A DNA stretch of 64,000 nt from Octopus sinensis (GCF_006345805.1 NC_043001.1:103230001-103294000); one strand, 5' to 3'; positions 44,489 through 61,608 are shown, counted from the first letter of the stretch. Notes: generated by a model from the sequence alone, not told the origin. Program-made: numbers and translations.

Positions 44489-44900
44489 TTATATAAATAA
44501 TAAATATTAGGGAATAAATCCAAATTTACAGGGAAAAAATCAGATTTAGGATTAAATCCAATTTTATAGTAAAATATTATAAAATATTATTAGAGACAAA
44601 ACCACTATTTTGCAAAACAAACAAGGAAAGACTTAATCAATACATAAAATTTTAATAAATAGTCAAAAAAACCGCCACTACAATTGTTTCTTGCCTTGAT
44701 CGACAATCTTCAGGTGGACTTCCAATCTAAAATATCAATATTTTAAAATATAAAAATAATAATTTTAAAATAATTAAAGTATGAATGAAAAAATATAAAT
44801 ATATAATCCATATATAACCTATATATAATCCATATATAATCAATATATAAACAATATATAAACTAAAATAAACCTATCAACAATTAAATATAAAATATAA
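44489..44900 (-). repeat. Inverted copy of the PLE 5' segment 47340-47750
   Basis: ~410-bp reverse-complement match that includes the hammerhead. Confidence 0.92.
44675..44717 (-). ncRNA. Second minimal hammerhead ribozyme (inverted copy)
   Basis: Reverse complement of 47523-47565 with one stem II change (gacaa to ggcaa, a G-U pair). Confidence 0.82.
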
Positions 44901-46334
44901 ACACACACACGTGTGCGTATTTTGATTGTGCAACTCGCCCATATGCATGTATGCGGGCGCGATTACATTGTTGCACATATCGAGCCCAAATAGCATGCAT
45001 ATGTACATGTGAGGGGGTACACGTACATGCCGTGCGCGTGTACCCCCTGCATTTATACCCGTGCGTGAATATACACATGGAGACTACCACACAGGTACAA
45101 ATGTGTATAGTAATGGGAGCCCCATCACTACACTCAATGTATAATCTCACCCATCCGCACGGATGTGAAAGTGAATCTCCGGTGTATATGTTGAGGCTTA
45201 TATGTAGCGCTGTGGAGGTGAACGTCGTTGAAATTGTGAATGAATGGGTGGAGTTGGGAATTGTAACCGGGTGGTGGGCTAGCGTTGCTTGGAATTGGGA
45301 ATGGAATAGTGTAGTAGTAAGGCAGGCATCGAGAATAGATTTGGGTTACTGCAAGTTGTTTGTTAGAGCTGCTAAGATGAGCTAAAGCTCATAATTGTAT
45401 ATAATAATTTATTATGGTAGTTTTATTAAAGAATCCATTCATAATAAATTTTTTTTAAGTAGTGTTGGTTTGCCACGTGGATATAGTTTTTAGTTCCATT
45501 TATTCTATTTCTCCATTCATAATTTTAAATGACGTTTACTTTCCATGGCGCGTATTCTTTTTTTACATAAGTTATATTTCTATGGTAACGTAATTTTGGT
45601 TTGATTTTTTAACGGCTAAGAATTAATTTCACTTCATAATTTGAAACTGACTTGTAAGTATGTATTTTATTTCTCCTTATGTCATATTGTTATTTTTGAT
45701 ATTCTGGTTAATTACGATGTATTTAATGTTGTTTTTTATTGGAGTGTTTATGTATATGAGATTGTGTGTGAGTTTTTAGTTGTATAATTTATTTATCTGT
45801 ATGAGTGTGGGTGTGTAAATATTGTTGTATATATCGAGTTTAGTGAGTATGTATATGCGTATATGTGAGGGAGTATATGTATCTGTTGTGTGTGTGTGTT
45901 TTGCGTGTGTGTGTGTTTGTGTGTGAATGTGTATATGGGTTTGTTATTTAGGTTTTGGGATGTATGTGTTAATTGTCTGTGTGGGGAGGGAGTGGGTTTT
46001 TGGTGTATATTGAGGTTTATAAGTTAGTATAGGTATGTGTATAAGTCGTGGATCTGTGGTTTACGTGTGTGTTTTTTGTGTGTGAATGTTTAGGTTAGGG
46101 GGATTGCTATATAGGTTTGTTATAGAGTTTAGCAAAGGGAGATTTTATCGTTATATGGTTTTAAGAGTTTTGGTTTATCATGGTTTTTTTAGGGAATTCG
46201 TGGTAATTTGTCTATTTTCGATGTTGGTTGTTTTATTACATTGTTTCATTCATAATTTTTGAGTGGTGTTCGTTTTGCCACGTGAATATTATTTTTAATT
46301 CCATTTATTCCATTTCTCCGTTCATAATTTTTAA
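44901..46334 (+). repeat. Direct repeat copy 1 (~1.43 kb, pseudo-LTR)
   Basis: Near-identical to 62525-63958 (offset ~17,624 bp). Confidence 0.93.
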
Positions 46335-47522: not shown

Positions 47523-47565
47523 CCACCTGAAGATTGTCGATCAAGACAAGAAACAATTGTAGTGG
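47523..47565 (+). ncRNA. Minimal type I hammerhead ribozyme
   Basis: ccac-CTGAAGA-ttgtc(gatcaa)gacaa-GAAAC-aatt-GTA-gtgg: full core, stems I-III and a palindromic loop 3. Confidence 0.85.
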
Positions 47566-47797
47566 CGGTTTTTTTGACTATTTATTAAAATTTTATGTAT
47601 TGATTAAGTCTTTCCTTGTTTGTTTTGCAAAATAGTGGTTTTGTCTCTAATAATATTTTATAATATTTTACTATAAAATTGGATTTAATCCTAAATCTGA
47701 TTTTTTCCCTGTAAATTGGATTTATTCCCTAATATTTATTATTTATATAATATTGATAATTTTGTATATTGAGTGTAATACCTCAATTTCGTAAATT

Positions 47798-49000
47798 ATG
47801 GATTTTACAGGTAAGATAGAACCGCTGTTTTGGGATTCATCTTTGAAAGATATTCCTATTCCTTCTAGAAAGGAATTTATCTTGAAACTTGTTAATAATG
47901 TTAAAGATTTTATTTCTAGAATTAAATGGAAAGCTTTTTACTATAATTTTTATTTATTTAATGATATTGATAGTAGGAATGATAATTTTACCTCTAAATT
48001 TAAATCTAGAAAGGAACCTCCATTTAATAAAGAATTACAATTACTTGAAGATAGTATATGGAAGGTGGTAAAAAATATTGAATTCCATAAATACCCAAAT
48101 AGAAATAATGAATATTTAAGGAATTTAGCAATTAAAATTAAAGATATGAGAAATATGGATGGTATTATAGTACAATCTGATAAAACAAGGAACCTATATA
48201 AATTAGATGTTAAATTATATGATAAACTATTAGGAAAAGAAATAATTAAAAAATATAAAATTGTTCCAGATGATATTCTTTATAATATTAATAAGGCCTC
48301 TAAAGTAGTAATGTTAAAATATGAGTTGGATAATAAAACTGAACCTTATGTACCTTTGCACCCCAGAATTACTCTTAAAAACCATAAAGATAATTTTTAT
48401 TCAGACCCTAAAGTTAGATTAATTTGCTCATGTAAATCGGACCTAGGTAAATTAAGTAAATTTATTTTAGATAAATATATTGATAAGTTAAATAAACTTA
48501 ATTATTTAAAATTATGGTTTAGTAATAATAATACATTGAAATGGTTTAATAATATTAAAGATAAAAATGGTTATAAATTTATTCAAATAGATATAGATAA
48601 TTATTATTCTTCTATTAATGAAATTGTGTTTAATAAAGCGCTTATTTTCGCAATGAATAAAGTGGGTATGTCACGGGAAGAAGTTAATGTAATTAAAATG
48701 GCTAGGAAATCGCTAATTAAATATAAAAATAAATTATGGGCTAGGAATGATACTAGAGATTGTTTTGATATACCTATGGGAGCACCAGATTCTGCACAGG
48801 CTACTGATTTAGTAGGTATTTTTCTTTTATCTGAACTCCAATTAGAAAATCTTAAGATAGAGGGTGGTTTATATAGAGACGATCTTCTACTAGTTACAAA
48901 GAATTGTACTAATAGGAATCTAGAAGTATATAAGAAAAAACTATATAGTTTCTTTAAAAGATATGGTTTAAGTATTACTATATATAAGGAGAATTATAAT
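47798..49000 (+). pseudogene. PLE reverse transcriptase, N-terminal ~401 codons, cut by the virus insertion
   Basis: SLKDIPIPS...RIKWKA, SDKTRNLY, DIDNYYSSI, IPMGAPDS and LYRDD. The tail of the track ORF (to 49099) reads into the viral TIR. Confidence 0.9.
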
Positions 49001-49306
49001 GTAATACGTGACGAGTACAGCGCAGTTCACCTAAAAAATCACATCATTTCTCAAAAAAGTAGCCAAAAAACCACTTTTAACAACACTTTTTATGGATAAA
49101 TCAGCAAAATACCCTAATATTCATGCTATTTTACCGCATTTTTATAAATAATCCCTCAAATCCGTTTTTTAACCGAAGTTTTTCCAGAAATATCACCAAT
49201 AAAAAATAGCTCTCGATCGCCAACATTTTTAGAGGAGTCACGTGACACCTTCTAAATCATGTGACTCTATGACTCATCCATACGTTCACCGATCAGTCAC
49301 GTGACC
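49001..49306 (+). repeat. Left terminal inverted repeat of the virus
   Basis: GTAATACGTGACGAGTACAGCGCAGTTCACC...GTCACGTGACC is the reverse complement of 59986-60292. By eye the only difference is A6 vs A7 in one homopolymer. Confidence 0.95.
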
Positions 49307-49418
49307 TAACCCCTAAAAAATCATAAGTAAAAAAAAAAAAAAAATTTAGGTGTTGGAAAAAACAGTAAAAAAAAAAAATCTAGTCGAAAAAACCCAATCA
49401 AAATTTGTTCCTAAGAAA

Positions 49419-52400
49419 ATGGCCAAGCAGAAATTCCAAGATCTAATTTACCACGAAACATTCGAATTAAAATCTATAAATGAAATAGCAAAAAAAATTA
49501 AAATTAGGTTTTACCCAGTTAAAATTAAATTAGCTATTTTATGTAAATTTTATAGACCATCTGATGATAAGAAAGTAGAAAGATATTTTAATTTAAAACC
49601 TATGGTAATTAAAAGTGAAAACAATAAAACTAAATTATTCTATAGTACTACAAAACAATTTAATACTTGGGTTGAAGATGTACAATTAGCAGGGAGTGGA
49701 TTTATATTTTTAGGGACTGTTGAACTAATTTTAAAACAGCATAAAGTACAATTTTTAGAAGGGTCTAGTTATATACCATTAGGGTTTAAAAGTCATTGTA
49801 TTATCAATGTAAAGAATACTGATAATAAATGTTTCTTATATTCAATTCTAGCAAAGTTATACCAACCAGAAAAAGATCCACAAAGAGTAACTAAGTATAA
49901 AGAGTACTTAGATTTCATTAATATGGATAATATAGAATATCCTGTAAAAGTATCAGATATAGCTAAAGTAGAAAAACAAAATACCTTCCTTAGTATAAAT
50001 GTTTTTTCATTAGATAATTATAAAGAAAAAGAATCTTTGTATCCTGTATACATTTCAAATTATAAAAAAAGAAAAGAAGTAGTAGATCTGCTATTATTGG
50101 CAAAAGGTGAAGTAACTCATTATGCCTTAATTAAAGATATCAATAAATATTTCTCAGATAAGGTAAATAGAAATAAAAAAGTGTTATGTAGAAGATGTTT
50201 AACATTACATAGATCACAAGAAGCATTAGATAGGCATCAAGCATTATGTGAAACAAATTCACCAGCTAGAACAGTAATGTCTAGTTCAGGAGTAACAAGG
50301 TTTATTAATCCTCATTTCAAATCTAGATTACCATTCGTGATTTATTCTGATTTTGAAGCAACAAATATACCATTTAAAAAACTAACAGAAGATAACACAA
50401 GAGCACTAGCAACACAGAAAATAAATAGTTTTGGTTTATATTTTAAATCTGATTATCCAGATCTAGTTTCCTCAGAATATATTACTTATACAGGAGAAGA
50501 TGCAATTGAAAAATACATCCAAAATATCTTATTATTTTATGAATCTGTAGATGATATTTTTAGAAGTAAATCAAAAGCAATATTAACAAAAGAAGAAAAA
50601 GTAGAATTTGAAAATGCTACTAAATGCTATATCTGTAATAATGAGTTTAATAGTGATAATAAAATAAAAGAACATTCACATTTATCAAATAAATATAGAG
50701 GAGCAGCATGTAAAGAATGTAATTCTAAAGAAGGTAGATCATCTAAAATATTACCTATTCTATTCCATAATGGATCAAATTATGATTTCCACTTTCTAAT
50801 TTCTGAACTAATGAAATATGAAACTAGATATAGAAAAGTAAAAGTGTTAGCAAGAACAGCAGAAGAATATATTTCAATAGATTTTGGTAACCAATCATTA
50901 AGATTAAGGTTCTTAGATTCATACAGATTTTTAGCAAGCAGTTTAGAGGGAATTGTAAAATCATTAAACTCCTTTCCAATCCTAGAATCTGAAATGTTTG
51001 ATACTTTTGATTATGAAAAAGAAGAAATAATAACTTCTAAATATAAAACAGATCTTCTGAAAACAAAAGGAATTTACCCTTATGAATACATTACATCTTT
51101 AGAAAAACTAAAAGAAAAAGAACTTCCTAAATTTATTAAAAATAAATCAGTTCAACTAGATAAGAAATTATACAATATTCCAAAAGATCATTTTCTCTAT
51201 AAATTTATTTTAAAATGGTATAATTATAAAAGAGTTTCTCCATGGCATTCTTCTTTAAAAAGAGAAGATATAACAGAAAAAGATTACCAAAAAGCATTAA
51301 AAGTTTGGGATTATTATGATTGTAAAACTATTCAAGATTATCATAATCTATATTTAAAATCTGATGTTTTACTTTTAGCAGATGCATTTGAACAATATAG
51401 AAAATTTAATTTAACTTATCATCAAATTGATCCTTGTTATTGTTATACAAATCCTGGATTAACATGGCAATGTGGGTTAAAATATACTGATATAAATTTA
51501 GAAAACTTACAAGATGAAGATATGTTTCTCTTATTCGAAAAGGGAATTAGAGGAGGATTTTCAGGTGTATTAGGAAGAAGATACGTTAAAGCAGATTCAG
51601 AAAATCAATTACTTTATCTAGATGCAAATAATTTATATGGTTATGCTATGTCTCTTCCATTACCAACTTCTGATTTTCAATGGGAAGAAGATTTAAACTA
51701 TTTTAAAAAAGTACCAAAAGGAAGGGGTTGTATTATAGAATGTGATTTAAAATATGTTTCAAAAGAAGAAACAAAGAAATTTCCTTTAGCTCCAGTTCAT
51801 TTTCAACCTACTATAGATATGCTTTCAGAATACCAATTAAAACTATTAGGAGAAAAAGCAACTAAGAAAGAAACAGTAGAAGACGCTAAGTTGATGTTAA
51901 CATTACAAGATAAAACAAATTATGTTATACACTATAAAATATTAAGAAAATTTATAGAATTAGGAATGGAAGTAACTAAAGTTCATAGAACTATTTCTTT
52001 TATAGAAAAACCTTGGTTAGCAGATTATATTAATTTTAATACAGAAAATAGAAAGAAAGCAAAAACTAACTTTGAAAAAGATTTATTTAAACAATCTAAT
52101 AATGCCTTCTTTGGTAAAACAATGGAAAATGTAAGAGATAGAAATAATGTAGAATTATTCAATAATGCAGATATAATTAAAAAGAAAATAAATAGTCCTA
52201 AGTTTTATAACTCTGTAATCTTTAATGAAAGCCTAGTAGCAATTATAAGTAAAAAAGGAAGTGTGGTATTAAACAAACCAATTTATTTAGGACAAGCAAT
52301 TCTAGATTTATCAAAGTTACTTATGTACGAATTTTATTATGATATAGTAGAAAAGGTATGGCCTGATAATGAAATACTTTATAGTGATACAGATTCAATT

Positions 52401-52919
52401 GTATTATCTATTAATTCTAAAGATGATATCTATAAAACTATGAAAGAAAAAACTCTAACAACAAACTTTTCAGAAGATCATCCTTTATATTTAAACAATG
52501 AAAGTATCCAGAATATATTTGATACTTCTGCTTATCCAACTGATCACTTCTTATATGATGGAAAAAATAAAAAAGTAATAGGAAAATTTAAAGATGAATT
52601 ATCTGGAGAAAAGATGTTAGAATTTATAGCATTAAAAAGTAAAAGTTATTCTTATTCTACTGAAAGTTCTACAGACTCCTCTACAGAAGAGTTTAAAAAA
52701 CTAAAAGGAAGCTCTAAAGCAACAATTAAAAAAGATATTAAACTAAAAGATTTTAAACATGCTCTATTCACTAGTACAAAACAATATAATAATAACTACT
52801 GTTTAAACTCTAAGAAGCATGAAATGTACCTACAACAAGTAAAAAAGATTTCAATTAATCCATTCGATAATAAGAGATTTATTCTTGATAATGGAATTGA
52901 TACTTTGCCATTCAGATAA
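49419..52919 (+). CDS. polB: Protein-primed family B DNA polymerase (pPolB) with N-terminal extension, Zn finger and embedded endonuclease VII-like motif
   Basis: The ORF track starts at 49350 (GTG); the first ATG is at 49419. Exonuclease motifs: YSDFE, FHNGSNYDFHF, YLKSDVLLLAD. Polymerase motifs: YLDANNLYGYAM, KQSNNAFFGK, YSDTDS. Also CRRC..H...C and CYIC...EHSH...YRGAACKECN. Confidence 0.95.
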   Translation: MAKQKFQDLIYHETFELKSINEIAKKIKIRFYPVKIKLAILCKFYRPSDDKKVERYFNLKPMVIKSENNKTKLFYSTTKQFNTWVEDVQLAGSGFIFLGTVELILKQHKVQFLEGSSYIPLGFKSHCIINVKNTDNKCFLYSILAKLYQPEKDPQRVTKYKEYLDFINMDNIEYPVKVSDIAKVEKQNTFLSINVFSLDNYKEKESLYPVYISNYKKRKEVVDLLLLAKGEVTHYALIKDINKYFSDKVNRNKKVLCRRCLTLHRSQEALDRHQALCETNSPARTVMSSSGVTRFINPHFKSRLPFVIYSDFEATNIPFKKLTEDNTRALATQKINSFGLYFKSDYPDLVSSEYITYTGEDAIEKYIQNILLFYESVDDIFRSKSKAILTKEEKVEFENATKCYICNNEFNSDNKIKEHSHLSNKYRGAACKECNSKEGRSSKILPILFHNGSNYDFHFLISELMKYETRYRKVKVLARTAEEYISIDFGNQSLRLRFLDSYRFLASSLEGIVKSLNSFPILESEMFDTFDYEKEEIITSKYKTDLLKTKGIYPYEYITSLEKLKEKELPKFIKNKSVQLDKKLYNIPKDHFLYKFILKWYNYKRVSPWHSSLKREDITEKDYQKALKVWDYYDCKTIQDYHNLYLKSDVLLLADAFEQYRKFNLTYHQIDPCYCYTNPGLTWQCGLKYTDINLENLQDEDMFLLFEKGIRGGFSGVLGRRYVKADSENQLLYLDANNLYGYAMSLPLPTSDFQWEEDLNYFKKVPKGRGCIIECDLKYVSKEETKKFPLAPVHFQPTIDMLSEYQLKLLGEKATKKETVEDAKLMLTLQDKTNYVIHYKILRKFIELGMEVTKVHRTISFIEKPWLADYINFNTENRKKAKTNFEKDLFKQSNNAFFGKTMENVRDRNNVELFNNADIIKKKINSPKFYNSVIFNESLVAIISKKGSVVLNKPIYLGQAILDLSKLLMYEFYYDIVEKVWPDNEILYSDTDSIVLSINSKDDIYKTMKEKTLTTNFSEDHPLYLNNESIQNIFDTSAYPTDHFLYDGKNKKVIGKFKDELSGEKMLEFIALKSKSYSYSTESSTDSSTEEFKKLKGSSKATIKKDIKLKDFKHALFTSTKQYNNNYCLNSKKHEMYLQQVKKISINPFDNKRFILDNGIDTLPFR

Positions 52920-52944
52920 ATAAAGTTTATTTCTTTTAAACAAA

Positions 52945-53361
52945 ATGACTTATGAAAAGTTTTGTACCAAGTGTGAAAAAAGTAAAACAGAAAAAGAATT
53001 CTATAGTAACCTAAATCTTACTTATTGTAAAAAATGTATAAGAATAATATCTAAGAATTATTATAAAAAAAATATGAAACAGCAACTTATAAAACTATGG
53101 ATATCTAGAGGAATAAAAACTAATGATTTTGATGAATTATACGATAAATATTCATCTTCTACTAATTGCTATTTTTGTGATATATCTTTTGATAATACAG
53201 TAAAAAATAAAAGAAGATGCTTAGATCACTGTAATCTCTCTGGTTCTCCTAGATTTATTATTTGTAGTAAATGTAATATAAATACTCTTCCTAAATTAGA
53301 TACCCTAAGAAATAAATTACATTTAGAATTACATAGATATTTTAACCGTGTACTAAGGTAA
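52945..53361 (+). CDS. Zn-ribbon plus T4 endonuclease VII-like (HNH-fold) nuclease, 138 aa
   Basis: N-terminal CTKC...CKKC. C-terminal CYFC...RCLDHCNLSGSPRFIICSKCN matches the endonuclease VII pattern CxxC...DHxH..G..R..LC..CN. Confidence 0.75.
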   Translation: MTYEKFCTKCEKSKTEKEFYSNLNLTYCKKCIRIISKNYYKKNMKQQLIKLWISRGIKTNDFDELYDKYSSSTNCYFCDISFDNTVKNKRRCLDHCNLSGSPRFIICSKCNINTLPKLDTLRNKLHLELHRYFNRVLR

Positions 53362-53367
53362 CTTTTT

Positions 53368-53994
53368 TTAATATTTAATTAGTGTAATCGTAGCTAAGGA
53401 GTAATTCCATGTTTTAAGCACAGATTTACTAAAATCGAAATAAGAACTATTCATATGTTTTACTGTTATTTCTTTACTATCAAACTTAAAATTACCTGAA
53501 ATAAATTTATAATAAGGGGATTCAAAAGTAGTTAAAGTCCAGAAATAAGAAATATTAGGTTTTACATAACTATAACTTTCAATCATTCTATGTTTTAAAG
53601 AAGCTGTAGAAGAGGTAAAAATAACAATATCTGGAGTAAAATTAATTGTAAAAGTACCTGATCCAGTAAATGTGATATCTTGTCTTAATCCTTTAAAATC
53701 TATATAATTCCTATTTTCTTGGTATTTAGAATCTACATATTCTTTATTTGCTGCATCTGTAGGATTAAAAGGACTTCCAACATTAATAGGTGTTCTTCCA
53801 TTTAGATTCCCAGATGTCCAATCAGCGTATTCTTTTGTAGCTGCATCTGTCTTTTTTACAGGCCATTCAAGATTACTTATCCCATAATCCTTCATATCAA
53901 TAGCTCCAGAAGCAACACCATTTTTAATATAATCAGTATTTTTTATTTTATTATTTTGTGATTCTTGATCAATAGGTCTTCCAAATATATCCAT
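53368..53994 (-). CDS. Putative virion fibre/spike protein, 208 aa
   Basis: Begins MDIFGR. Has two stalk-like repeats (P..KTDAATKEYAD, P..PTDAANKEYVD) of the type seen in phage/Polinton fibres, and a beta-rich C-terminal head. Confidence 0.6.
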   Translation of the reverse strand: MDIFGRPIDQESQNNKIKNTDYIKNGVASGAIDMKDYGISNLEWPVKKTDAATKEYADWTSGNLNGRTPINVGSPFNPTDAANKEYVDSKYQENRNYIDFKGLRQDITFTGSGTFTINFTPDIVIFTSSTASLKHRMIESYSYVKPNISYFWTLTTFESPYYKFISGNFKFDSKEITVKHMNSSYFDFSKSVLKTWNYSLATITLIKY

Positions 53995-54064
53995 TTCTTT
54001 ACACTTAATTTTAAAAGGAAAAAAGTAAATTACTAAAAACTACTTAGTTTTTAGCTACCATAAA

Positions 54065-54808
54065 TTAAATAATTATTGCTTTAAACTTATTTTTATACCT
54101 TCCATTATTCTTCTTTTTTGTTGTATCTATTGTAAGAAATCCGTAATCTTCACTCCATACTTTATTACAAAGTTTTCTAAATTCTTGATAACTCATATCA
54201 TCATAAGCATAGTCCTCGAATATAAATCTAAGTGATCTCTTATCTTGATAAAATAATATAATTAAATTTGCATTTTCTCTTATAGTTTGTTTAGGTAGTT
54301 TAAAGAAGTTTTGTGAAATATAAAAACAATCAATATTTGAATGTCTTCCTCTTGTATAATAATCTTCACATTTTACTTGTTTTTCTCCAATAACATCATC
54401 AAAGATAATAAGATTCTTTTTAGATCTATCTACTTCAGCAGGATCCATAATATCTTCATTCTTATCAAAGAAAGTAACTGTTACTTCAGGAGTAAATTCT
54501 GCATTCTTTTTTAAATAATCTACTACTATATCAGAATCTACATCTTGGTTTTGAAATAGTTTTAATACTCCATCTTTAGGAAGTATCTCTAAATTCTTTA
54601 ATAATTCGTATTCTTTTTGAAATAAAGATTTACCATAAACCATTAAATTATTATAATCTAAAAATCCTTTTTGCAATAATAAATTCATTAAAAGATTTGT
54701 TTTTCCACATCCTGATTTCCCTACTATAATTCCTCTGATACTCCTTGGTAGATTTATATGATTATTTCTTTTTATTTTATGTCTGCTAGATAAATTTTCT
54801 ATCTCCAT
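54065..54808 (-). CDS. A32/FtsK-like genome packaging ATPase, 247 aa
   Basis: Walker A GKSGCGKT, Walker B LIIFDD, and the TRGRHSNIDCFYISQNFFKLPKQTIRENAN signature. Confidence 0.93.
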   Translation of the reverse strand: MEIENLSSRHKIKRNNHINLPRSIRGIIVGKSGCGKTNLLMNLLLQKGFLDYNNLMVYGKSLFQKEYELLKNLEILPKDGVLKLFQNQDVDSDIVVDYLKKNAEFTPEVTVTFFDKNEDIMDPAEVDRSKKNLIIFDDVIGEKQVKCEDYYTRGRHSNIDCFYISQNFFKLPKQTIRENANLIILFYQDKRSLRFIFEDYAYDDMSYQEFRKLCNKVWSEDYGFLTIDTTKKKNNGRYKNKFKAIII

Positions 54809-54833
54809 TTTTCTAGGAATGTTTAATTCTAAC

Positions 54834-56093
54834 CTAACTAATTAGATTAAATCTTCTATCTGATGAATGAAGACTAAGTTCGATATCAGATAAAAGTGTT
54901 GCAAAAACTTCTACACCTGTTCCTGGGGCTGAATTAAAAGTTGCTTTAATTTGGATATCCATATTACTAACTCTAGTTCTATCATCATATTTAGAAATAT
55001 CTATTACATAGATAGGATAAAGGGATTTAAAGGTGATATAAGAGAAAGAAGGTGGTTCATCAGTATCATAAAAATTCTTTTTGAAATCATAAGATTGTTT
55101 AAAGATTCTAGAGTATTTTTCTTCAGGATAATCAATTTCTATATCATGATTAGGATATCTTCTTGTATTAATCTCTACAAGTATCTTTTTTAGTTCTAGA
55201 TTAGAAAAGTTAGATTTACTAAATAGATTATTCTTTTGCATCCCAATTACAATATATCTAGGTGTTCCTGTAGTATTTTGTAGATTCCAACTTAGATTAG
55301 TAGAATTAGCAGCAGGAATAAAAGTTTGTGTGTTTCTACCTCTGAATAGAATCTTTAATATCTTCTTTTTATCAATCTGATCATAGAGTTTAATTTCTGT
55401 TTCTAGTGAAGGTTTAATAACTGGGATAAATAAAGACATCTTAGAAAGAGATAATTTAAAATCTGTTTTATTTTCTCCTTTCATCACTTGAAGAGATTCA
55501 TGATTTACTAATCTTTTTAATCTAAATGTTTGTTGTACTCCATACAAAACTTTTTTATAATCTTCCATAAACCCAAAGATATGATCCAGAGGAACATTAA
55601 AACTAAATTTCTTAAATCTAGATCTTAATACCATAGAATTATTTGATTCATTTGCATTATAATCAATATCAGGAAGCCATGACATACTTAATCCATTAGA
55701 AGAACTTTGTGGAATAGAATATTTAAACATCCCTAACATAGAAGTAGTTTGTCCTGGTCTGTCTATATCTTCTACTACATTCCCATTAATAAGATAAGTC
55801 ATTCTTTCAAAGAGATACATCATAGAATTATTAATCAAACTAACTTTTTCATAATCTGCTGCAGCAATATCTGTTCCATCAGACTTTGTTAGTTCTCCTT
55901 CAAAATAGAGATAAGCATCAGAAGGAAAAGTGATTAAATCTTGTTGCTGAATTACAATTTCTTTATTCCCTGTTGTATTAAGATTAGTAGTATTAATAGG
56001 AGGAAACTCTACGTACTCAAATTCCTTTATACTATTATCAGAAAAGAGAGAATGTTCACTATCATAGATATCAAAGATTTCTTTAGTATTCAT
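54834..56093 (-). CDS. Major capsid protein (double jelly-roll), ~420 aa
   Basis: Track ORF 54834-56156; likely start is the ATG at 56093. Size, position beside the ATPase, and motifs (EFEYVEFPP, FYFEG..., PRYIVIGMQ, RRYP, PIYVIDIS) fit the Polinton/adintovirus MCP. Confidence 0.85.
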   Translation of the reverse strand: MNTKEIFDIYDSEHSLFSDNSIKEFEYVEFPPINTTNLNTTGNKEIVIQQQDLITFPSDAYLYFEGELTKSDGTDIAAADYEKVSLINNSMMYLFERMTYLINGNVVEDIDRPGQTTSMLGMFKYSIPQSSSNGLSMSWLPDIDYNANESNNSMVLRSRFKKFSFNVPLDHIFGFMEDYKKVLYGVQQTFRLKRLVNHESLQVMKGENKTDFKLSLSKMSLFIPVIKPSLETEIKLYDQIDKKKILKILFRGRNTQTFIPAANSTNLSWNLQNTTGTPRYIVIGMQKNNLFSKSNFSNLELKKILVEINTRRYPNHDIEIDYPEEKYSRIFKQSYDFKKNFYDTDEPPSFSYITFKSLYPIYVIDISKYDDRTRVSNMDIQIKATFNSAPGTGVEVFATLLSDIELSLHSSDRRFNLIS

Positions 56094-56124
56094 TTTCTTA
56101 GCGAGTTTTTTAGTAAAAAAAATA

Positions 56125-56451
56125 TTAATTAATGAATTTAATAGAACTTCCTGCAAACATATTTTCTATAACTGAAGGATCATAAGAAGGTTGCTCTAAT
56201 TTAGGTTGTTTAACTCTTCTAGGTTTTGCTTTAGGTTTTATCTTATTAGATATAGCATTAACTATTTCTTCTGCACCCTTAGATGCAGCAGCTTTAATAG
56301 CTGTTTCTGCTCCTGTTTTCATTAAAGATTTTGCTGTTGTAGAGGCTAAAAGTTTTGCAATAGCACTCATTATTCCTTCACCCTCCTGGGTAGCTTGTTT
56401 TATTTTTTCTTGTTTTTCTTGTTTCTTATTTTTTCTCTTTTTAATATACAT
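56125..56451 (-). CDS. Small basic core/membrane-active protein with amphipathic helix (cupiennin-like), 108 aa
   Basis: K-rich N-terminus, then GEG followed by IMSAIAKLLASTTAKSLMKTGAETAIKAAASKGAEEIVNAI, an amphipathic helix. Confidence 0.55.
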   Translation of the reverse strand: MYIKKRKNKKQEKQEKIKQATQEGEGIMSAIAKLLASTTAKSLMKTGAETAIKAAASKGAEEIVNAISNKIKPKAKPRRVKQPKLEQPSYDPSVIENMFAGSSIKFIN

Positions 56452-56501
56452 TTTAATTAGTACAAAATAAGTTATAAAAAAGTAAAATTTAGTAAATTAA
56501 C

Positions 56502-57257
56502 TTAGGTAAAAAGTAGGTTGTTTATTTTAAGAAAATCTACTTTTTCTATCTTACCAGTTTCATAAAGATATTTTAAAATATCAGAAATTTCATTATTTAC
56601 ATTATGATTTCCTGCTTGTCTTGCACCTAGTAAAAGTTCTAATCTTTGGGTTAAATATTTAGGATCAGAAATAACAATTCCTTCACCTGCTATCATATCA
56701 TTTTCTTCTATTTCTTCTATAATAGGTTCAAAAGTTCTTGTTTGATTTTGTATCATTTTATAAATTTTATAGTCATTAGAATTAAATCCTCCCCTTCCTC
56801 TTGAATTACTAAAAAAGTTTAATTTAGATGCTAGGGTATAATAAGTACTTTTTTCTTCATTAGATAAATCTGTAATACGAATATCCTTATCTCTAGAAAT
56901 TAATTTATAAAGATTTTCAGTCATTGGAATTTCTTCGTTATTTATAATTAGATTATCTCCTTTAAAGAAAAGTGGTTCATCTTTTAAATAAACTCTATCC
57001 CCAATTAATTTAAAAAAGGTATTTAGATTATTTTTTAGTGTTCCTTTTGCTAAATATTTAGACCCTAAATTACTTGGAGAAACTGTAATCGGAAGAGTTT
57101 CTGATTCTTTTAAACTTTCTATTGCTGAGATAATTGGTTTTTGCTGTTGCATTAAATCTTGATAATCATAAAAATCATTCATCTTTTTTTCTTTTGAGTC
57201 ATGATATAATTTCTTTCTTAAAGATAACACTTTTTTCATCTTATCTAGTTCAGTCAT
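56502..57257 (-). CDS. Conserved Polinton-type protein of unknown function, 251 aa
   Basis: Intact ORF in the structural block. The C-terminal AGEG...LTQRLELLLGARQAGNHNVNNEISDIL motif is of the kind recalled from Polinton ORFs. Confidence 0.6.
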   Translation of the reverse strand: MTELDKMKKVLSLRKKLYHDSKEKKMNDFYDYQDLMQQQKPIISAIESLKESETLPITVSPSNLGSKYLAKGTLKNNLNTFFKLIGDRVYLKDEPLFFKGDNLIINNEEIPMTENLYKLISRDKDIRITDLSNEEKSTYYTLASKLNFFSNSRGRGGFNSNDYKIYKMIQNQTRTFEPIIEEIEENDMIAGEGIVISDPKYLTQRLELLLGARQAGNHNVNNEISDILKYLYETGKIEKVDFLKINNLLFT

Positions 57258-57271
57258 TTCTTTAGAATAAA

Positions 57272-57679
57272 TTATAATAAATAATGTAAAAGATCTTTAA
57301 ATTGCTTTATAGTTGTAGGATTCTTATTTAAAATAAATATACAGAGATGTCCACAAATAACAGAATTATCTGGTTGTAATATTAAATTATTATAGAATAC
57401 CCCTTTATAAGAGTTTACATTTCTAATATAAGTTAAGAATTCTGGAGGTGGAATTAACCCATAAGAATCAAAATATAGTACTAAAGAATTCTTTTTAATC
57501 CAACAAGTCCAATGTGTTCCTTGATTTTCTGATGTATCTAAATTTAGTACACCTGATTCTTTTTCTTTAGGAGTAATATCTTTTAATTCATCTCTCATAA
57601 AACACCCTCTATAGGCTTTATTTTTTACTAATTTATTCATATCTAAATTTGTTAGTGATTTATAAAATATTGGATCCAT
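57272..57679 (-). CDS. Adenain-like (adenovirus C5-type) cysteine maturation protease, 135 aa
   Basis: VLNLD...GTHW, YFDSYG, LQ...CGHLC supply the catalytic H, D, Q and C residues. Confidence 0.9.
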   Translation of the reverse strand: MDPIFYKSLTNLDMNKLVKNKAYRGCFMRDELKDITPKEKESGVLNLDTSENQGTHWTCWIKKNSLVLYFDSYGLIPPPEFLTYIRNVNSYKGVFYNNLILQPDNSVICGHLCIFILNKNPTTIKQFKDLLHYLL

Positions 57680-57709
57680 TTCTTTTACTTTATATTTTTA
57701 ATTAATTTA

Positions 57710-58303
57710 TTAGAATAATTTAATAATATCTCCTATCAGTGGAACATTTTTAAGGAAATCTAGAAATCCATCTCCTTTCCTCAAATACAATCCTTCACCG
57801 CTATAAATCCCATTATTTTTAAACATTCCAGGTCTTCCTATAAAAGGAACAATCTTAAATCCATTTCCCTCACAACAACTTACTTTAAACAAACTAGATC
57901 CTTTTTTAAGATAAAGTCCACTTCCAATATTACAATTACCACTTCCCATTACTTTTTGTACACCTGTTTGTGCTAACCCAGAAAGAGCTCCTACTCCTAA
58001 TGCTGGAAGAATTTTACTAGCAATCACTGGTAAAAATCGTGATGCAAGTCCTGCAAGCATACCAAGAAATCCACCATGCTTAATATTATATTTTACTTGT
58101 GCATCTGATAAAGTTAGTTTTACTCCTTTTTGTTTTATGATCGCATCATTAACTTTTTTTAGTTGTGGTACAGTAAGATAAATATCTGACCCACCTTGAA
58201 CTAAATCAGGGTAAGCAAATATAAGTACTATCTGACCTGACTGTTTTTCTATTTTTTCTTTTTGTTGTTCTGAAACATAAACTGAGAATTTTTTGTAAGC
58301 CAT
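57710..58303 (-). CDS. Glycine-rich putative core/membrane-penetration protein, 197 aa
   Basis: HGGFLGMLAGLASRFLPVIASKILPALGVGALSG hydrophobic/amphipathic segment, plus several GxG motifs. Confidence 0.6.
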   Translation of the reverse strand: MAYKKFSVYVSEQQKEKIEKQSGQIVLIFAYPDLVQGGSDIYLTVPQLKKVNDAIIKQKGVKLTLSDAQVKYNIKHGGFLGMLAGLASRFLPVIASKILPALGVGALSGLAQTGVQKVMGSGNCNIGSGLYLKKGSSLFKVSCCEGNGFKIVPFIGRPGMFKNNGIYSGEGLYLRKGDGFLDFLKNVPLIGDIIKLF

Positions 58304-58335
58304 TTTTTAAAAGAAATAAAATTAGTTAAAAGAAG

Positions 58336-59064
58336 TTATTCTTTTAAAATAAATCTCAAATCCACAAGCTCTCTGTTATTATTAATTAATTCACCATTTT
58401 GATCTGTAATTCTAATATTAATTCTTGAAATATTTCTTGAAGAAGTTGGAAGAAAAACTGGATTAATAATATCTTTATTTATCTTAAATCCGAATTGAAC
58501 ATTAGGAAAGAAGGAATAAATGATTGGTTTTTGAACTCCATTAACTGTTGATCCTTCAATGTTACTAACTTCTACATTTATAATATTTACTGAAAGAATA
58601 TCAACAACATTATCTGAAGTTGTTGGAGAGGATTGAATTAAATTATTTTTGAAACCTAAAATCTTTTTTAATTTATCATTTAAAGTTACACTAACAAAAG
58701 GTGTTTTAAAAGTAATTATTGAATGTCCTGTTGTTTCTACTGGTTTTACTGAAAATACATCATCATCTGTAACTCCTTTATCTTTAATTTCATCTACTAA
58801 ATAATCGTTTAATTGTGTAATATCATATGATCCATTTGGAATATTAATATCCATTAAAGAATTTGCTGATTTTAAAGAAATACTACAATCTACCATATTA
58901 TGAATTGCATTATAAGTTGAAATATAATCTAATGCCATTCTAGGAATATTTTCAAATTCCAAGGCTGGTGAAAAATTTATTGTATATTCTGTTCCTCTAA
59001 AAGATGCTCCTATCATTTCATTTTTCTTTTGCTTTACTTTTACATTCAGATATTCTTGATCCAT
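58336..59064 (-). CDS. Minor capsid protein (penton, single jelly-roll), 242 aa
   Basis: IPNGSYDITQLN, LKKILGF, NVEVSNIEGSTVNG...IIYSF and ISRINIRITDQNGELI match the Polinton penton pattern. Confidence 0.8.
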   Translation of the reverse strand: MDQEYLNVKVKQKKNEMIGASFRGTEYTINFSPALEFENIPRMALDYISTYNAIHNMVDCSISLKSANSLMDINIPNGSYDITQLNDYLVDEIKDKGVTDDDVFSVKPVETTGHSIITFKTPFVSVTLNDKLKKILGFKNNLIQSSPTTSDNVVDILSVNIINVEVSNIEGSTVNGVQKPIIYSFFPNVQFGFKINKDIINPVFLPTSSRNISRINIRITDQNGELINNNRELVDLRFILKE

Positions 59065-59081
59065 TTTTAAAAGAAATAAAA

Positions 59082-59453
59082 TTAACTGTATATCCCTAAA
59101 CCTAAAGTATTTTTTGCTCCTATTACGTTTCTAACTATATTTCTTTCTACCCATTGTTTTGGATTTGATACTTTTAAAGACTCTAATTTTTTTAACATTT
59201 GGGTATCGCATATTTTTCTATTTTTGCTATCTCTATAACAAATATCATGTTTCATACAAATTCTATCTAATCCATTTCTAGGAATAGAATGTGGAAGAGG
59301 ATTATCATTTTCATCTAATCTTTTTTCTAATTTGGTTCCAGGACCACAAAACTTATATCCTGGTAGGTGCATTTCAAATGGTAAATCTGTCCATCCATTT
59401 CCTTTATATTTTTTATTAATTTGTTTTGTTTTATTTCCTTTTTTATAATACAT
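59082..59453 (-). CDS. Parvovirus VP1u-type phospholipase A2 (PLA2X), 123 aa
   Basis: Ca-binding loop GYKFCGPGT and catalytic NGLDRICMKHDICY (HDxxY). Confidence 0.88.
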   Translation of the reverse strand: MYYKKGNKTKQINKKYKGNGWTDLPFEMHLPGYKFCGPGTKLEKRLDENDNPLPHSIPRNGLDRICMKHDICYRDSKNRKICDTQMLKKLESLKVSNPKQWVERNIVRNVIGAKNTLGLGIYS

Positions 59454-59486
59454 TTTTAAATGTTCATTTTTAGTTTTTAAAACTAA

Positions 59487-59687
59487 TTAAGTTTGTTTAG
59501 TAACTTTTTTTAAGCAGTTTACTTCTGTAAATGTTCTAAGTTGTTTTAGTATTTTTTGTAATTTTTCTAGGTATTCCTCTTTTAAATAATTATCTTTTAT
59601 ATATTTTATTTTCTCTTTCAGGTATTTTATCATCTCACTAAGTTGTTTTATTTTTGTAATAAATTTCGTCAAAAATTCTTCTCTCAT
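59487..59687 (-). CDS. Small basic helical/coiled-coil protein, 66 aa
   Basis: ATG-initiated ORF in the same-strand gene array with the same A-rich start context. Confidence 0.5.
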   Translation of the reverse strand: MREEFLTKFITKIKQLSEMIKYLKEKIKYIKDNYLKEEYLEKLQKILKQLRTFTEVNCLKKVTKQT

Positions 59688-59702
59688 TTTCTAGGGATTT
59701 TT

Positions 59703-59921
59703 TTAGCATTTTCTTTTTTTAAAATAATCAGGATTTCTTTCCTTAAATTCGTTAAATGCTTTTTTATATTTTTCTTTATTTAACTGATAATGCTTCTGTT
59801 TTCTTGGTCTATCACAATCTATACATTTTCCTCTATACCCATCTACACAATTTTTTTCTTTATGGAATTCAGAATGCAGTTTGGTCTTTTCACAATATTT
59901 GCAATATTTTTCATTGATCAT
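59703..59921 (-). CDS. Small Zn-ribbon protein, 72 aa
   Basis: CKYC...K...EF......CIDC resembles the N-terminus of the 138-aa ORF at 52945. Confidence 0.6.
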   Translation of the reverse strand: MINEKYCKYCEKTKLHSEFHKEKNCVDGYRGKCIDCDRPRKQKHYQLNKEKYKKAFNEFKERNPDYFKKRKC

Positions 59922-59985
59922 TTTTTAAGGAATAATTTTGAGTAGATTTTTTTTAACATAAAAATTTAATTTTTTTTAAGGGTTG

Positions 59986-60292
59986 GGTCACGTGACTGAT
60001 CGGTGAACGTATGGATGAGTCATAGAGTCACATGATTTAGAAGGTGTCACGTGACTCCTCTAAAAATGTTGGCGATCGAGAGCTATTTTTTATTGGTGAT
60101 ATTTCTGGAAAAACTTCGGTTAAAAAACGGATTTGAGGGATTATTTATAAAAATGCGGTAAAATAGCATGAATATTAGGGTATTTTGCTGATTTATCCAT
60201 AAAAAGTGTTGTTAAAAGTGGTTTTTTGGCTACTTTTTTTGAGAAATGATGTGATTTTTTAGGTGAACTGCGCTGTACTCGTCACGTATTAC
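59986..60292 (-). repeat. Right terminal inverted repeat of the virus
   Basis: Ends ...GCGCTGTACTCGTCACGTATTAC(T); mirror of the left TIR. Confidence 0.95.
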
Positions 60293-60634
60293 TATCTCTA
60301 TTTAGATGTTAATTTTAATCTTATTACAGGTAAAACACAACCATATCATAAACTTAATGAGAACCTTAGATATATAAATGTTAATAGTAATCACCCATTT
60401 TCTATTAAAAAATCGTTGATTAATAATATAAGTAAACGTATTTCATTACTCTCTTATGATATAGAGATTTTTAATAAACATGCTAATTATTATAATGAGG
60501 CCCTTAGAGGGGCAGGTTATAATAGGAATATTAAATTTTATAATATTAGTGATAAAGATTTAATTGATAATTTTCGAGATACTTCTAATAATAATTATAA
60601 TTTTGTTAGGTTTAGTGGTAAAAATAATAGATAA
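60293..60634 (+). pseudogene. PLE RT continuation (thumb region) after the virus
   Basis: YLDVNFNLITGKTQPYHKLNENLRYINVNSNHPFSIKKSL directly follows the RT motifs left of 49000. Ends at TAA 60632-60634. Confidence 0.88.
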
Positions 60635-60639
60635 TATAA

Positions 60640-61608
60640 AAAAATAATAAAAATGATAAAAATATAAATAAGAATAATAATAATAATAATAAATATAATA
60701 ATAATAATAATATAAATAAGAATAATAAAAATAAAAATAAATTTAATAATTATTATAATAATTATATTGATAAAATTAATAATATTAATAATTCCTTAAA
60801 TGCTGTACATAGATATAATTTTGATAATAATTTTAATAAAATAAAGAATTATAAATATATTTATAATAATGATAATAATAATAAGGTTATTAAGAATAAA
60901 ATTTGGTTAATAGTTCCTTATGGAGATCAAGTAAAAACGAATATTATTAAAGAAATTTTAGATGTTATAGAACTATTTATTAGAGTTAATCGTAAATATA
61001 GAAACATTTTCTCTTTTAATAATTTTGGAGTTGGTTATTCTACCACTAATAATGTTGGTAACATTATTTCTTCATTTAATAAATATAAACTGAATAATTT
61101 TTATAAAAAGAAATTATTTGATAATAATATTAATAATGATAAGACTTATATTAATTGTACATGTAGAGATAAATCTAATTGTATATTAAATAATAATTGT
61201 GATATTAACGATGTAGTGTATAAATGTATAGTTACATTACATGATAATAACTTTAAGAATAATAATTACCCAAAAGCGGTTTATATAGGTTCTACTTCCT
61301 CAAAAATAAAACTAAGAATCGCACAACATATGAATTCTTTTAAAAATAAAAACTTAATCAACTCAACTGGACTTAGTAAGTACATTTGGAGTCTTAAATC
61401 ATTAAATATTAATTATAGTTTAATTTGGGAAATAATTTGTAAAACTAAATCATATACTATAGGAGCTAATTGTTGTTATTTATGCTCTAATGAGTTTAAA
61501 GAAATTTTATTTTATAAGTATGATAATTTACTTAATACTGGTGAAGAGCGCAAAATAAAATGCAGACATAAGTTACTTTACCTATATAATAAGTTTCATG
61601 ATAAATAG
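60640..61608 (+). pseudogene. PLE Asn-rich linker plus GIY-YIG endonuclease, frameshifted relative to the RT
   Basis: Open frame from 60640: IWLIVPY...TNI, CTCRDKSNC...C, VVYKC...YIGST, R...H..SF, LSKYIWSLK, CYLC..E, LN...E...CRH. Confidence 0.88.

What the first reader, a model, noticed from the sequence alone, without database searches (positions are those of the whole stretch)
48980..60320. Virus inserted in the RT of a Penelope-like element without a target-site duplication
Seen: the PLE RT reads ...ITIYKENYN up to 49000 and resumes as YLYLDVNFNL from 60293. Joining 49000 to 60293 restores the frame. The 6 bp flanking each end (TATAAT vs TATCTC) are not duplicated. Read inward, the right end is AGTAATACG (the Polinton-like 5'-AG), while the left is TGTAATACG, where GTAAT could equally be host codons. 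Inference: the insertion arose by end-joining or microhomology capture at a DNA break, not integrase catalysis, which fits the missing integrase.
Basis: partly seen in the sequence, partly recalled or inferred. Interest (0 to 1): 0.8.

Follow-up and report, generated by a model that had tools for sequence, protein, structure and literature searches.

The report
Integrase-less virus genome inside octopus retroelement
A complete 11.3-kb genome of a Polinton/adintovirus-like DNA virus that has lost its integrase gene sits inside a retrotransposon gene on an Octopus sinensis chromosome, with no duplicated, missing or extra host bases, so the host's own DNA-break repair probably pasted it in.

Summary
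Window 49001-60292 (11,292 bp) is one element bounded by ~320-bp terminal inverted repeats that are 99% identical. It has 13 open, full-length ORFs: a protein-primed-type PolB, a double jelly-roll capsid protein, an A32-type packaging ATPase, a PLA2-like protein, a protease-like protein, a penton-like protein and an endonuclease VII-like protein.

It splits one reverse-transcriptase gene of a Penelope-like retroelement. Compared separately with four uninterrupted cephalopod relatives, the two pieces account for every residue, with none gained or lost. No direct repeat of 5 bp or more abuts the element under any boundary within ±12 bp. The immediate hexamers match at 3 of 6 positions.

An integrase profile built from relatives hits 22 of 31 related loci. 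It hits nothing in the element or anywhere else in the window.

Insertion without an rve integrase is therefore well supported. Host end-joining is the best inference. Both junctions show zero microhomology, so blunt ligation fits better than microhomology capture. The source is O. sinensis GCA_006345805.1.

Integrase-less Polinton-like viruses integrated in algal genomes are already known. This is a clean animal example and a new variant of a known kind. Interest is moderate.

The parts
49001..60292 (.). Complete inserted virus-like element, 11,292 bp, 25-28% GC
   Evidence: Bounded by the inverted repeats. Holds 13 open ORFs with no internal stops, all full-length against syntenic relatives. 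There is no second copy in the window.
49001..49320 (+). Left terminal inverted repeat
   Evidence: perfect for 58 bp from the tip, 99% identical over 320/321 bp.
59972..60292 (-). Right terminal inverted repeat
49350..52919 (+). Family B DNA polymerase of the protein-primed type (ORF open from 49350, first ATG at 49419), with an Endonuclease VII-like insert at residues 413-464
   Evidence: Relatives reach 50% identity. More distant relatives carry PF03175 together with PF02945. A profile of relatives scores 1392 bits. Pfam finds Endonuclease_7 at E = 3e-6. There is no direct Pfam or PDB polymerase hit.
52945..53361 (+). Stand-alone endonuclease VII/HNH-like protein, 138 aa
   Evidence: PF02945 at E = 9e-6 and phrog_2633 at E = 1e-11. 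It is not homologous to the 138-aa gene at the same position in L007. No close relatives were found in metagenome contigs.
53368..53994 (-). 208-aa protein with fibre-like motifs
   Evidence: Two short hits to phage tail-fibre families. The function is inferred.
54065..54808 (-). A32/FtsK-type genome-packaging ATPase, 247 aa
   Evidence: PF04665 at 30.5 bits, above its 22.8-bit cut-off. 71% identical to the L004 homologue.
54834..56093 (-). Double jelly-roll major capsid protein, 419 aa (= P0001)
   Evidence: PF21738 at E = 1e-29. Relatives are 59-69% identical. This protein is the only gene called in the public record at this locus.
56125..56451 (-). 108-aa basic protein, syntenic with relatives
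56502..57257 (-). 251-aa conserved protein of unknown function
   Evidence: 47% identical to the L002 and L004 homologues. The relatives carry a weak DUF8207 hit.
57272..57679 (-). 135-aa cysteine-protease-like protein
   Evidence: 62-65% identical to relatives, with invariant H, D and C residues. The profile's best PDB hit is the ASFV S273R cysteine protease, but only weakly (E = 0.013).
57710..58303 (-). 197-aa conserved protein with a glycine/alanine-rich hydrophobic stretch
   Evidence: 51% identical to relatives. Function unknown.
58336..59064 (-). 242-aa penton-like (minor capsid) candidate
   Evidence: Conserved and syntenic in L002, L004 and L005. No profile or PDB support. Assigned by position only.
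59082..59453 (-). PLA2-like protein, 123 aa
   Evidence: PF08398 at E = 2e-10. In relatives the integrase gene lies between this gene and the penton-like gene. Here only 17 bp separate them.
59487..59687 (-). 66-aa ORF of unknown function
59703..59921 (-). 72-aa zinc-ribbon ORF resembling the N-terminal half of endonuclease VII-family proteins
47798..61608 (+). Interrupted ORF of the flanking Penelope-like retroelement, with an RT-like part and a GIY-YIG-like C-terminal part. It is broken by one insertion (the element above) and one further frame change. There are no stops inside the aligned segments.
   Evidence: Its pieces align to consecutive parts of uninterrupted relatives. A structure model of relative P0016 has a reverse-transcriptase fold with telomerase among the top hits.
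61216..61608 (+). GIY-YIG-like C-terminal domain of the flanking retroelement
   Evidence: Aligns to residues 645-782 of the uninterrupted paralogue at E = 7.5e-19. No Pfam or NCBIfam hit.
44489..44901 (-). Inverted, 5'-truncated copy of the retroelement's 5' region (matches 47340-47750 at 99.3%)
   Evidence: This arrangement is described as typical of Penelope-like elements.

Best explanation
A full-length linear double-stranded DNA genome of an adintovirus/Polinton-like virus, from a lineage that has lost its rve integrase, was ligated into a chromosomal double-strand break inside a Penelope-like retroelement of Octopus sinensis.

Shown:
- The element is complete, with symmetrical repeat tips.
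- Its 13 genes are intact.
- It has no integrase.
- The host site has no duplication and no net gain or loss.
- Neither junction has microhomology.

Inferred:
- The joining was done by the host's classical (blunt, Ku/ligase IV-type) non-homologous end-joining.
- This happened after the terminal protein was removed. By established knowledge, protein-primed replication leaves such a protein on each 5' end.
- The insertion is evolutionarily recent, because the repeat arms are 99% identical and all ORFs are open.
For: - Element bounds and inverted repeats.
- Same reading phase on both sides, and an element length that is a multiple of three.
- Residue-for-residue continuity of the two pieces against four uninterrupted relatives and one paralogue at DNA level.
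- No flanking repeat above chance under any boundary.
- No rve hit in the element or the window, against 22 of 31 related loci with hits. The integrase lies next to PLA2 or PolB in L002 and L004-L008.
- rve integrases typically leave 6-bp duplications.
- All ORFs are intact.
- No other recombinase-type domain was found in any ORF.
Against: - No empty allele or second insertion could be retrieved, so the exact pre-insertion sequence is inferred from paralogues that are only 38-56% identical.
- End-joining often trims ends. Here both viral tips and the host site are untouched, which is possible but unusually tidy.
- The element encodes endonuclease VII/HNH-like nucleases whose role is unknown.
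- The natural genome termini of this virus are not known independently.
Confidence: 0.6

Rival explanations
1. The element's own endonuclease VII/HNH-like nuclease (the 138-aa protein and/or the PolB insert) made or processed the host break, and host ligation completed the insertion. This would be a nuclease-assisted route that replaces the lost integrase.
For: - There are two Endonuclease_7 domains and a related zinc-ribbon ORF.
- The stand-alone gene is not shared with L007 at the same position and has no close relatives in metagenome contigs.
- The junctions are unusually clean.
Against: - The PolB-embedded domain is present in most integrase-bearing relatives, so it is not a replacement for the integrase.
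- By established knowledge, endonuclease VII-type enzymes usually resolve branched replication or recombination intermediates.
- No target specificity can be judged from one insertion.
Confidence: 0.1
2. An rve integrase supplied in trans by a co-resident integrase-encoding relative inserted the element.
For: - Close relatives carry an rve integrase.
- In-trans use has been proposed for integrase-less Polinton-like viruses integrated in algae.
Against: - There is no duplication: the flanking hexamers match at 3 of 6 positions although the repeat arms are 99% identical.
- The codon count leaves no room for duplicated bases.
- rve integrases typically give 6-bp duplications.
- There is no integrase in the 64-kb window.
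Confidence: 0.07
3. A replication-based or homology-guided event, such as template switching at a stalled fork or recombination with a short similar stretch, copied the viral DNA into the site.
For: It cannot be excluded from one filled site. Both the retroelement and the virus are very AT-rich, 21-28% GC, so short chance similarities are common.
Against: - There is zero microhomology at either junction (sequence).
- The complete genome is present with both tips ending at the same repeat position. This fits ligation of a free linear molecule, not copying that starts and stops at arbitrary points.
Confidence: 0.07
4. Integrase-mediated insertion with a normal duplication, followed by loss of the integrase gene and decay of the duplication.
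For: The integrase is ancestral in this group.
Against: - Three of six flank positions would have had to change while the 320-bp repeat arms kept 99% identity and all 13 ORFs stayed open.
- A duplication would add two codons, and none is seen.
- Only 17 bp separate the two genes that flank the integrase in relatives, with both neighbours intact.
Confidence: 0.03
5. Assembly artefact: free viral DNA was wrongly placed in the chromosome.
For: The element is intact and could be an infecting virus present in the sequenced tissue. Only one copy is seen.
Against: The two flanks are adjacent residues of one gene, at base precision on both sides. A misjoin or a chimeric library molecule would not produce both junctions from neighbouring host nucleotides.
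Confidence: 0.03

Closest known systems
Adintoviruses / animal Polintons (Mavericks)
   Same: - Protein-primed-type PolB, double jelly-roll capsid protein and A32-type ATPase.
- A protease-like gene and long terminal inverted repeats.
- A PLA2-like virion protein, described as typical of Alpha (Mayetiola-class) adintovirus virion modules.
- Gene order matches the integrase-bearing mollusc relatives L002 and L004, the latter from an Okenia hiroi run.
   Different: - No rve integrase, which is the defining gene of Polintons and the 'int' in adintovirus.
- No 6-bp target-site duplication.
- 11.3 kb, which is below the 15-40 kb given for most Polintons.
- A stand-alone endonuclease VII-like gene.
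Polinton-like viruses (PLVs) integrated in algal and protist genomes without an rve integrase
   Same: Integrated, bounded by inverted repeats, lacking an rve integrase and often lacking duplications. The mechanism is unknown or proposed to work in trans or through a tyrosine recombinase.
   Different: - The host is an animal.
- The capsid protein and gene order group with integrase-bearing animal elements, so the loss is secondary.
- A protease-like gene is present, whereas PLVs were described as lacking one.
- No tyrosine recombinase was found.
- The interrupted ORF gives base-level evidence on the target site.
Endogenous viral elements of non-integrating DNA viruses captured by host end-joining
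   Same: Insertion without a viral integrase and without a target-site duplication (established knowledge).
   Different: Such insertions are usually fragmentary or rearranged, with trimmed ends. Here the whole genome is present with both tips intact and no host loss.
Penelope-like elements (the flanking gene)
   Same: - Reverse-transcriptase fold with telomerase among the best structural matches.
- A C-terminal GIY-YIG-like module.
- An adjacent inverted 5'-truncated copy.
   Different: - No hammerhead ribozyme motif was found.
- Neither the RT nor the GIY-YIG module is recognised by Pfam.
- Very AT-rich, with an asparagine-rich linker.

Membership tests
Polinton/Maverick-adintovirus group | [quoted passage not shown] | tested here: met
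   The 1189-aa ORF is 50% identical to its nearest relatives. More distant homologues carry PF03175. A profile of relatives scores 1392 bits. The ORF itself has no direct Pfam or PDB polymerase hit.
Polinton/Maverick-adintovirus group | Retrovirus-type (rve) integrase | tested here: not met
   A profile built from six relatives' integrases gives no hit in any frame of the element or the window, against hits in 22 of 31 related loci. Pfam also finds none.
Polinton/Maverick-adintovirus group | Double jelly-roll major capsid protein | tested here: met
   PF21738 at E = 1e-29.
Polinton/Maverick-adintovirus group | A32/FtsK-type packaging ATPase | tested here: met
   PF04665 at 30.5 bits against a 22.8-bit cut-off.
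Polinton/Maverick-adintovirus group | Minor (penton) capsid protein | tested here: inconclusive
   A conserved syntenic 242-aa gene is present but has no profile or PDB match.
Polinton/Maverick-adintovirus group | Adenain-type cysteine maturation protease | tested here: inconclusive
   The profile's best PDB hit is the ASFV S273R cysteine protease at E = 0.013. There is no Pfam hit.
Polinton/Maverick-adintovirus group | Terminal inverted repeats | tested here: met
   320 bp at 99% identity.
Polinton/Maverick-adintovirus group | 5-6-bp target-site duplication | tested here: not met
Polinton/Maverick-adintovirus group | OTU-like domain at the PolB N-terminus (adintovirus PolB classes) | tested here: inconclusive
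   No Pfam hit in residues 1-397 at E up to 10. Structure was not tested.
Polinton/Maverick-adintovirus group | PLA2-like virion protein (Alpha-class adintovirus virion module) | tested here: met
   PF08398 at E = 2e-10.
Polinton-like viruses sensu Yutin et al. 2015 | Minimal module (MCP, mCP, ATPase) with a distinct MCP form and without protease or rve integrase | tested here: inconclusive
   The rve integrase is absent, as in PLVs. However, a protease-like gene is present, and the capsid protein's nearest relatives are integrase-bearing elements, two of them from animal sequencing data. No capsid phylogeny was made.
Penelope-like elements | Reverse transcriptase related to telomerase RT | tested here: met
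   An AlphaFold model of the uninterrupted relative P0016 (core pLDDT 70-93) matches retron and DRT reverse transcriptases and several TERT structures at E = 2e-6 to 1e-5. The window's pieces align to that relative. Pfam and PDB sequence searches found nothing.
Penelope-like elements | GIY-YIG endonuclease domain (C-terminal in canonical EN+ elements) | tested here: inconclusive
   The C-terminal ORF is homologous to the paralogue's C-terminus and shows a YIG-type motif. There is no Pfam or NCBIfam hit, and that part of the structure model has low confidence.
Penelope-like elements | Pseudo-LTRs or an adjacent inverted 5'-truncated copy | tested here: met
   A 413-bp inverted copy at 99.3% identity.
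Penelope-like elements | Hammerhead ribozyme motif in the repeats | tested here: not met
   No Rfam match at E up to 0.1 in 43000-64000.

The most novel reading that the evidence does not exclude
This element represents a lineage of animal adintovirus-like viruses that has replaced rve-integrase insertion with a nuclease-driven route. Its own endonuclease VII/HNH-type enzyme would open host DNA, and host ligation would then seal in the complete genome without a duplication. That would be a previously undescribed way for a Polinton-type virus to enter an animal germ line.
Probability: 0.08. Interest if true: 0.75.

Novelty: new variant of a known kind. Interest (0 to 1): 0.45.

Why it matters
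How integrase-less Polinton-like viruses enter host genomes is an open question. Published proposals are an integrase borrowed in trans or a tyrosine recombinase. Because this insertion interrupts a conserved reading frame, the target site can be read at single-codon resolution without an empty allele.

The reading argues against an rve-type staggered cut. It also shows that an animal adintovirus-like lineage can lose its integrase and still end up whole in a chromosome. The element is intact and apparently young, so it is a useful marker for presence/absence surveys in octopus populations. It also records a virus group not yet described in cephalopods: two literature searches found no such report.

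Tried and rejected
- Exact-sequence look-ups of the ATPase and the penton-like protein found no other contig.
- The repeat tip has no exact match in viral contigs.
- The capsid protein found no close relatives in viral contigs.
- The 138-aa nuclease found no close relatives in metagenome contigs.
- I tried to read a reference integrase-made junction from two integrated, integrase-bearing relatives, L007 and L008. Their shared sequence starts abruptly beside the integrase gene with no left inverted repeat, and it ends in a variable 76-bp tandem array. No clean ends could be defined.
- L033, a 9.8-kb contig with terminal repeats and no integrase hit, looked like a free integrase-less genome. Its ORFs are fragmented, so I did not use it.
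- Sequence searches of PolB against solved structures found nothing, either alone or as a 3-sequence profile. The same was true for the retroelement profile.
- Alternative boundaries were rejected on frame and codon count: a 1-bp T/T duplication, a TA duplication of the mariner type, and GTAAT counted as host sequence.
- The ORFs open on both strands at 20.3-21.3 kb are a (CATA)n microsatellite, not genes.


Full report
**What is at the coordinates**

Reading 48700-49300 and 60000-60600 shows two long stretches that are reverse complements of each other. The repeat finder and a BLAST of the two ends give arms at 49001-49320 and 59972-60292. They are perfect for the first 58 bp and 99% identical over 320/321 bp, with two mismatches and one indel. 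The bases just outside, 49000 and 60293, are both T and so are not complementary. The repeat, and hence the element, ends at 49001 and 60292, for a length of 11,292 bp. No other copy of the element or of its ends occurs in the 64-kb window.

**The flanking gene is one gene in two pieces**

- The ORF at 47798 runs to the element and ends on a complete codon at 49000.
- Its continuation starts on a complete codon at 60293.
- Both pieces are in the same phase, and the element length is a multiple of three.
Each was compared separately with relatives.

A protein search with the left piece found cephalopod proteins only. These were Argonauta hians P0015 (38% identity over 99% of the query), Octopus sinensis P0018 and Octopus bimaculoides P0017 and P0019, plus one metagenomic protein, P0016.

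In an alignment with the two pieces as separate rows, all four uninterrupted relatives have ten residues between the conserved LSI/LDI and (Y/F)LD motifs. The left piece fills eight of those columns, and the first two residues of the right piece account for the other two. The aligner displaced those two residues to distant columns, so this assignment rests on the residue count.

The O. sinensis paralogue in locus L003 is an uninterrupted 783-aa ORF. It has the same number of codons over this stretch at DNA level. By tblastn, the left side matches paralogue residues 1-253 and the right side matches 257-782. The three unaligned paralogue residues correspond to one window residue on the left and two on the right. 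Net gain or loss at the site is therefore zero codons.

**No target-site duplication**

The hexamers next to the element, TATAAT and TATCTC, agree at three of six positions. I scanned every pair of boundaries shifted by up to 12 bp on either side. No exact flanking repeat was longer than 4 bp. Of the two 4-bp repeats, one (ACGT) lies inside both repeat arms and is its own reverse complement. The other leaves no inverted repeat at the ends. In random pairs of flanks from this AT-rich DNA, exact repeats of 5 bp or more arise in about 16% of trials even with only ±3 bp of slack.

Any duplication of 1, 2, 4 or 5 bp would break the reading phase. One of 3 or 6 bp would add codons, and none is seen. 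For comparison, intact vertebrate Mavericks have perfect 6-bp duplications, and rve integrases typically produce 6-bp duplications.

**What the element encodes**

There are thirteen ORFs. All are open, end in a stop codon and are full-length against syntenic relatives, and twelve begin with ATG. The PolB ORF's first ATG lies 23 codons inside the mechanical ORF start. Relatives' N-termini vary, so I do not count this as damage.

- **Major capsid protein:** double jelly-roll, PF21738 at E = 1e-29.
- **Packaging ATPase:** A32-type, PF04665 above its cut-off.
- **PLA2-like protein:** PF08398 at E = 2e-10.
- **Polymerase:** the 1189-aa ORF has no direct Pfam or PDB polymerase hit. Its homologues are up to 50% identical and include named hits from Mytilus, Rhodnius and Paramuricea. 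The more distant ones carry PF03175, the organellar/viral protein-primed PolB family, together with PF02945.
- **Endonuclease VII-like sequences:** one domain is embedded in PolB. A stand-alone 138-aa gene is a second copy (PF02945 at E = 9e-6, phrog_2633 at E = 1e-11). A 72-aa zinc-ribbon ORF resembles the N-terminal half of the same family.
- **Protease-like protein:** 135 aa, 62-65% identical to relatives. Its profile's best PDB hit is the ASFV S273R cysteine protease, but only at E = 0.013.
- **Penton-like protein:** the 242-aa gene is assigned by position and conservation only.
- **Fibre-like protein:** the 208-aa protein has two short fibre-like motifs.

The PLA2-like gene is described as characteristic of the Alpha (Mayetiola-class) adintovirus virion module.

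**The integrase is truly missing, and that is a derived state**

In the nearest capsid relatives the gene order is PLA2, rve integrase, penton-like gene, and then the same genes as here. Those relatives are L002, from assembly GCA_044670265.1, and L004, from run SRR13555242, which a paper assigns to the nudibranch Okenia hiroi. Both have 59% capsid identity to the window's element. The more distant L005, L006, L007 and L008 also carry an rve integrase.

In the window only 17 bp separate the PLA2 and penton-like genes. A profile built from six relatives' integrases hits 22 of 31 related loci at E = 1e-27 to 1e-137. It hits nothing in any frame of the element or of the whole window. No other recombinase-type domain was found.

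**Source and reality of the insertion**

The capsid protein is on record once, on CM016863.1 (135.9 Mb) of GCA_006345805.1. A published paper identifies that accession as the chromosome-scale Octopus sinensis assembly. P0018, which is named as O. sinensis, lies on the same assembly.

The two host flanks are neighbouring residues of one gene at base precision. A misassembly or a chimeric library molecule is therefore very unlikely to have produced both junctions. Read-level confirmation was not possible with these tools.

**Identity of the flanking gene**

Pfam does not recognise it, and a profile against PDB sequences found nothing. An AlphaFold model of the uninterrupted relative P0016 was built from an alignment that included the window's pieces as separate rows. 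It has mean pLDDT 61, with 70-93 in the core. The model matches retron and DRT reverse transcriptases and several telomerase TERT structures at E = 2e-6 to 1e-5.

Penelope-like element RTs are reported to share their most recent ancestor with telomerase RTs. These elements are also described as often having an adjacent inverted 5'-truncated copy. The window has such a copy: 44489-44901 matches 47340-47750 at 99.3% in inverted orientation.

The C-terminal ORF at 61216-61608 is homologous to the paralogue's C-terminus. It shows a YIG-type motif but is not recognised by any profile. No hammerhead ribozyme was found. 'Penelope-like element' is therefore a reasonable label, with two defining features met, one inconclusive and one not met.

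Apart from the insertion, this copy's ORF has one further frame change between the RT part and the endonuclease part. There are no stops inside the aligned segments.

**Mechanism**

If the pre-insertion site had 49000 next to 60293, the first viral base (G) differs from the next host base (T). The last viral base (C) differs from the preceding host base (T). Neither junction therefore has any microhomology.

Several facts together are what ligation of a free linear genome into a clean double-strand break would give:
- both repeat tips end at the same position;
- the host site has no loss, gain or duplication;
- no integrase is present.

By established knowledge, protein-primed genomes carry a terminal protein on each 5' end. 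That protein would have to be removed first, and classical end-joining can ligate blunt ends without loss. Both of these steps are inference.

The rivals fare as follows.
- **Integrase borrowed in trans**, as proposed for integrase-less Polinton-like viruses in algae: this predicts a duplication that is not there.
- **Integrase insertion followed by decay:** this would need half the duplicated bases to change while the repeat arms stayed 99% identical and every ORF stayed open.
- **A role for the element's own endonuclease VII-like enzymes:** this cannot be excluded. However, the PolB-embedded copy is shared with integrase-bearing relatives.
- **Template switching or homology-guided copying:** the absence of shared bases and the presence of the exact full genome make this unlikely.

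**Comparison with what is known, and novelty**

By gene content and nearest relatives the element belongs with animal Polintons and adintoviruses. It fails their defining integrase test and lacks their duplication. In lacking an integrase it behaves like the Polinton-like viruses of algae and protists, several of which are integrated without any known integration enzyme. The loss here is secondary, and the host is an animal.

Literature searches for adintoviruses in octopus and for endogenous viral elements in O. sinensis found nothing. I rate it a new variant of a known kind. It is a tidy, informative case rather than a new class of system.

Noticed in passing
window 50586-50741 (PolB residues 413-464) and relatives P0020-P0092: An Endonuclease VII-like (PF02945) domain is embedded in the polymerase and is conserved in most relatives of this PolB clade across molluscs, insects and cnidarians. 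Two relatives (P0037, P0041) also carry intein/LAGLIDADG domains.
   Followed up: partly
window 52945-53361 and 59703-59921: A stand-alone 138-aa endonuclease VII/HNH-like gene and a 72-aa zinc-ribbon ORF resembling its N-terminal half. The 138-aa gene is not homologous to the gene at the same position in L007 and has no close relatives in metagenome contigs.
   Followed up: partly
window 44489-47750 and 63035-63979: The retroelement is preceded by an inverted 413-bp copy of its own 5' region. G/T-rich repeats (a 265-bp tandem unit at 46388-46901) lie upstream, and a related stretch (85% identical) lies downstream at 63035-63979. Whether these are pseudo-LTRs or a satellite that the element inserted into was not resolved.
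   Followed up: partly
window 47000-62000: Both the retroelement (21-24% GC) and the virus (24-28% GC) are much more AT-rich than the surrounding 28-46% GC DNA. The retroelement's linker is an (AAT)n-like asparagine-rich stretch at 60619-60792.
   Followed up: no
window 35809-36726 (- strand): A 305-aa ORF with a mariner-type Transposase_1 domain (E = 4e-20), from an unrelated DNA transposon remnant.
   Followed up: no
window 20528-21166: A 640-bp (CATA)n microsatellite, followed by (AC)n, (TTC)n and other simple repeats up to 23274. It explains the ORFs that appear open on both strands there.
   Followed up: yes
L007 8770-21700 and L008 8770-21700 (ENA assembly ERZ25069866): Two integrated, integrase-bearing relatives lie on megabase contigs of one assembly. 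Their shared sequence starts abruptly beside the integrase gene and ends in a variable 76-bp tandem-repeat array. No terminal inverted repeat was found.
   Followed up: partly
L033 1-9821 (IMG/VR contig): A 9.8-kb contig with about 490-bp terminal inverted repeats (86% identical), a PolB relative and no integrase hit. Its ORFs are fragmented, so it is either degraded or uses another genetic code.
   Followed up: partly
L012 (IMG/VR contig, 16.9 kb): Appears to be a complete free genome of the wider group, with a 401-bp terminal inverted repeat match (99%) that probably extends beyond the stored locus, plus integrase, capsid and PLA2 genes. Its termini were not examined.
   Followed up: no
L003 2916-4928: A separate non-LTR-type reverse-transcriptase ORF lies just upstream of the uninterrupted retroelement paralogue on O. 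sinensis CM016888.1.
   Followed up: no
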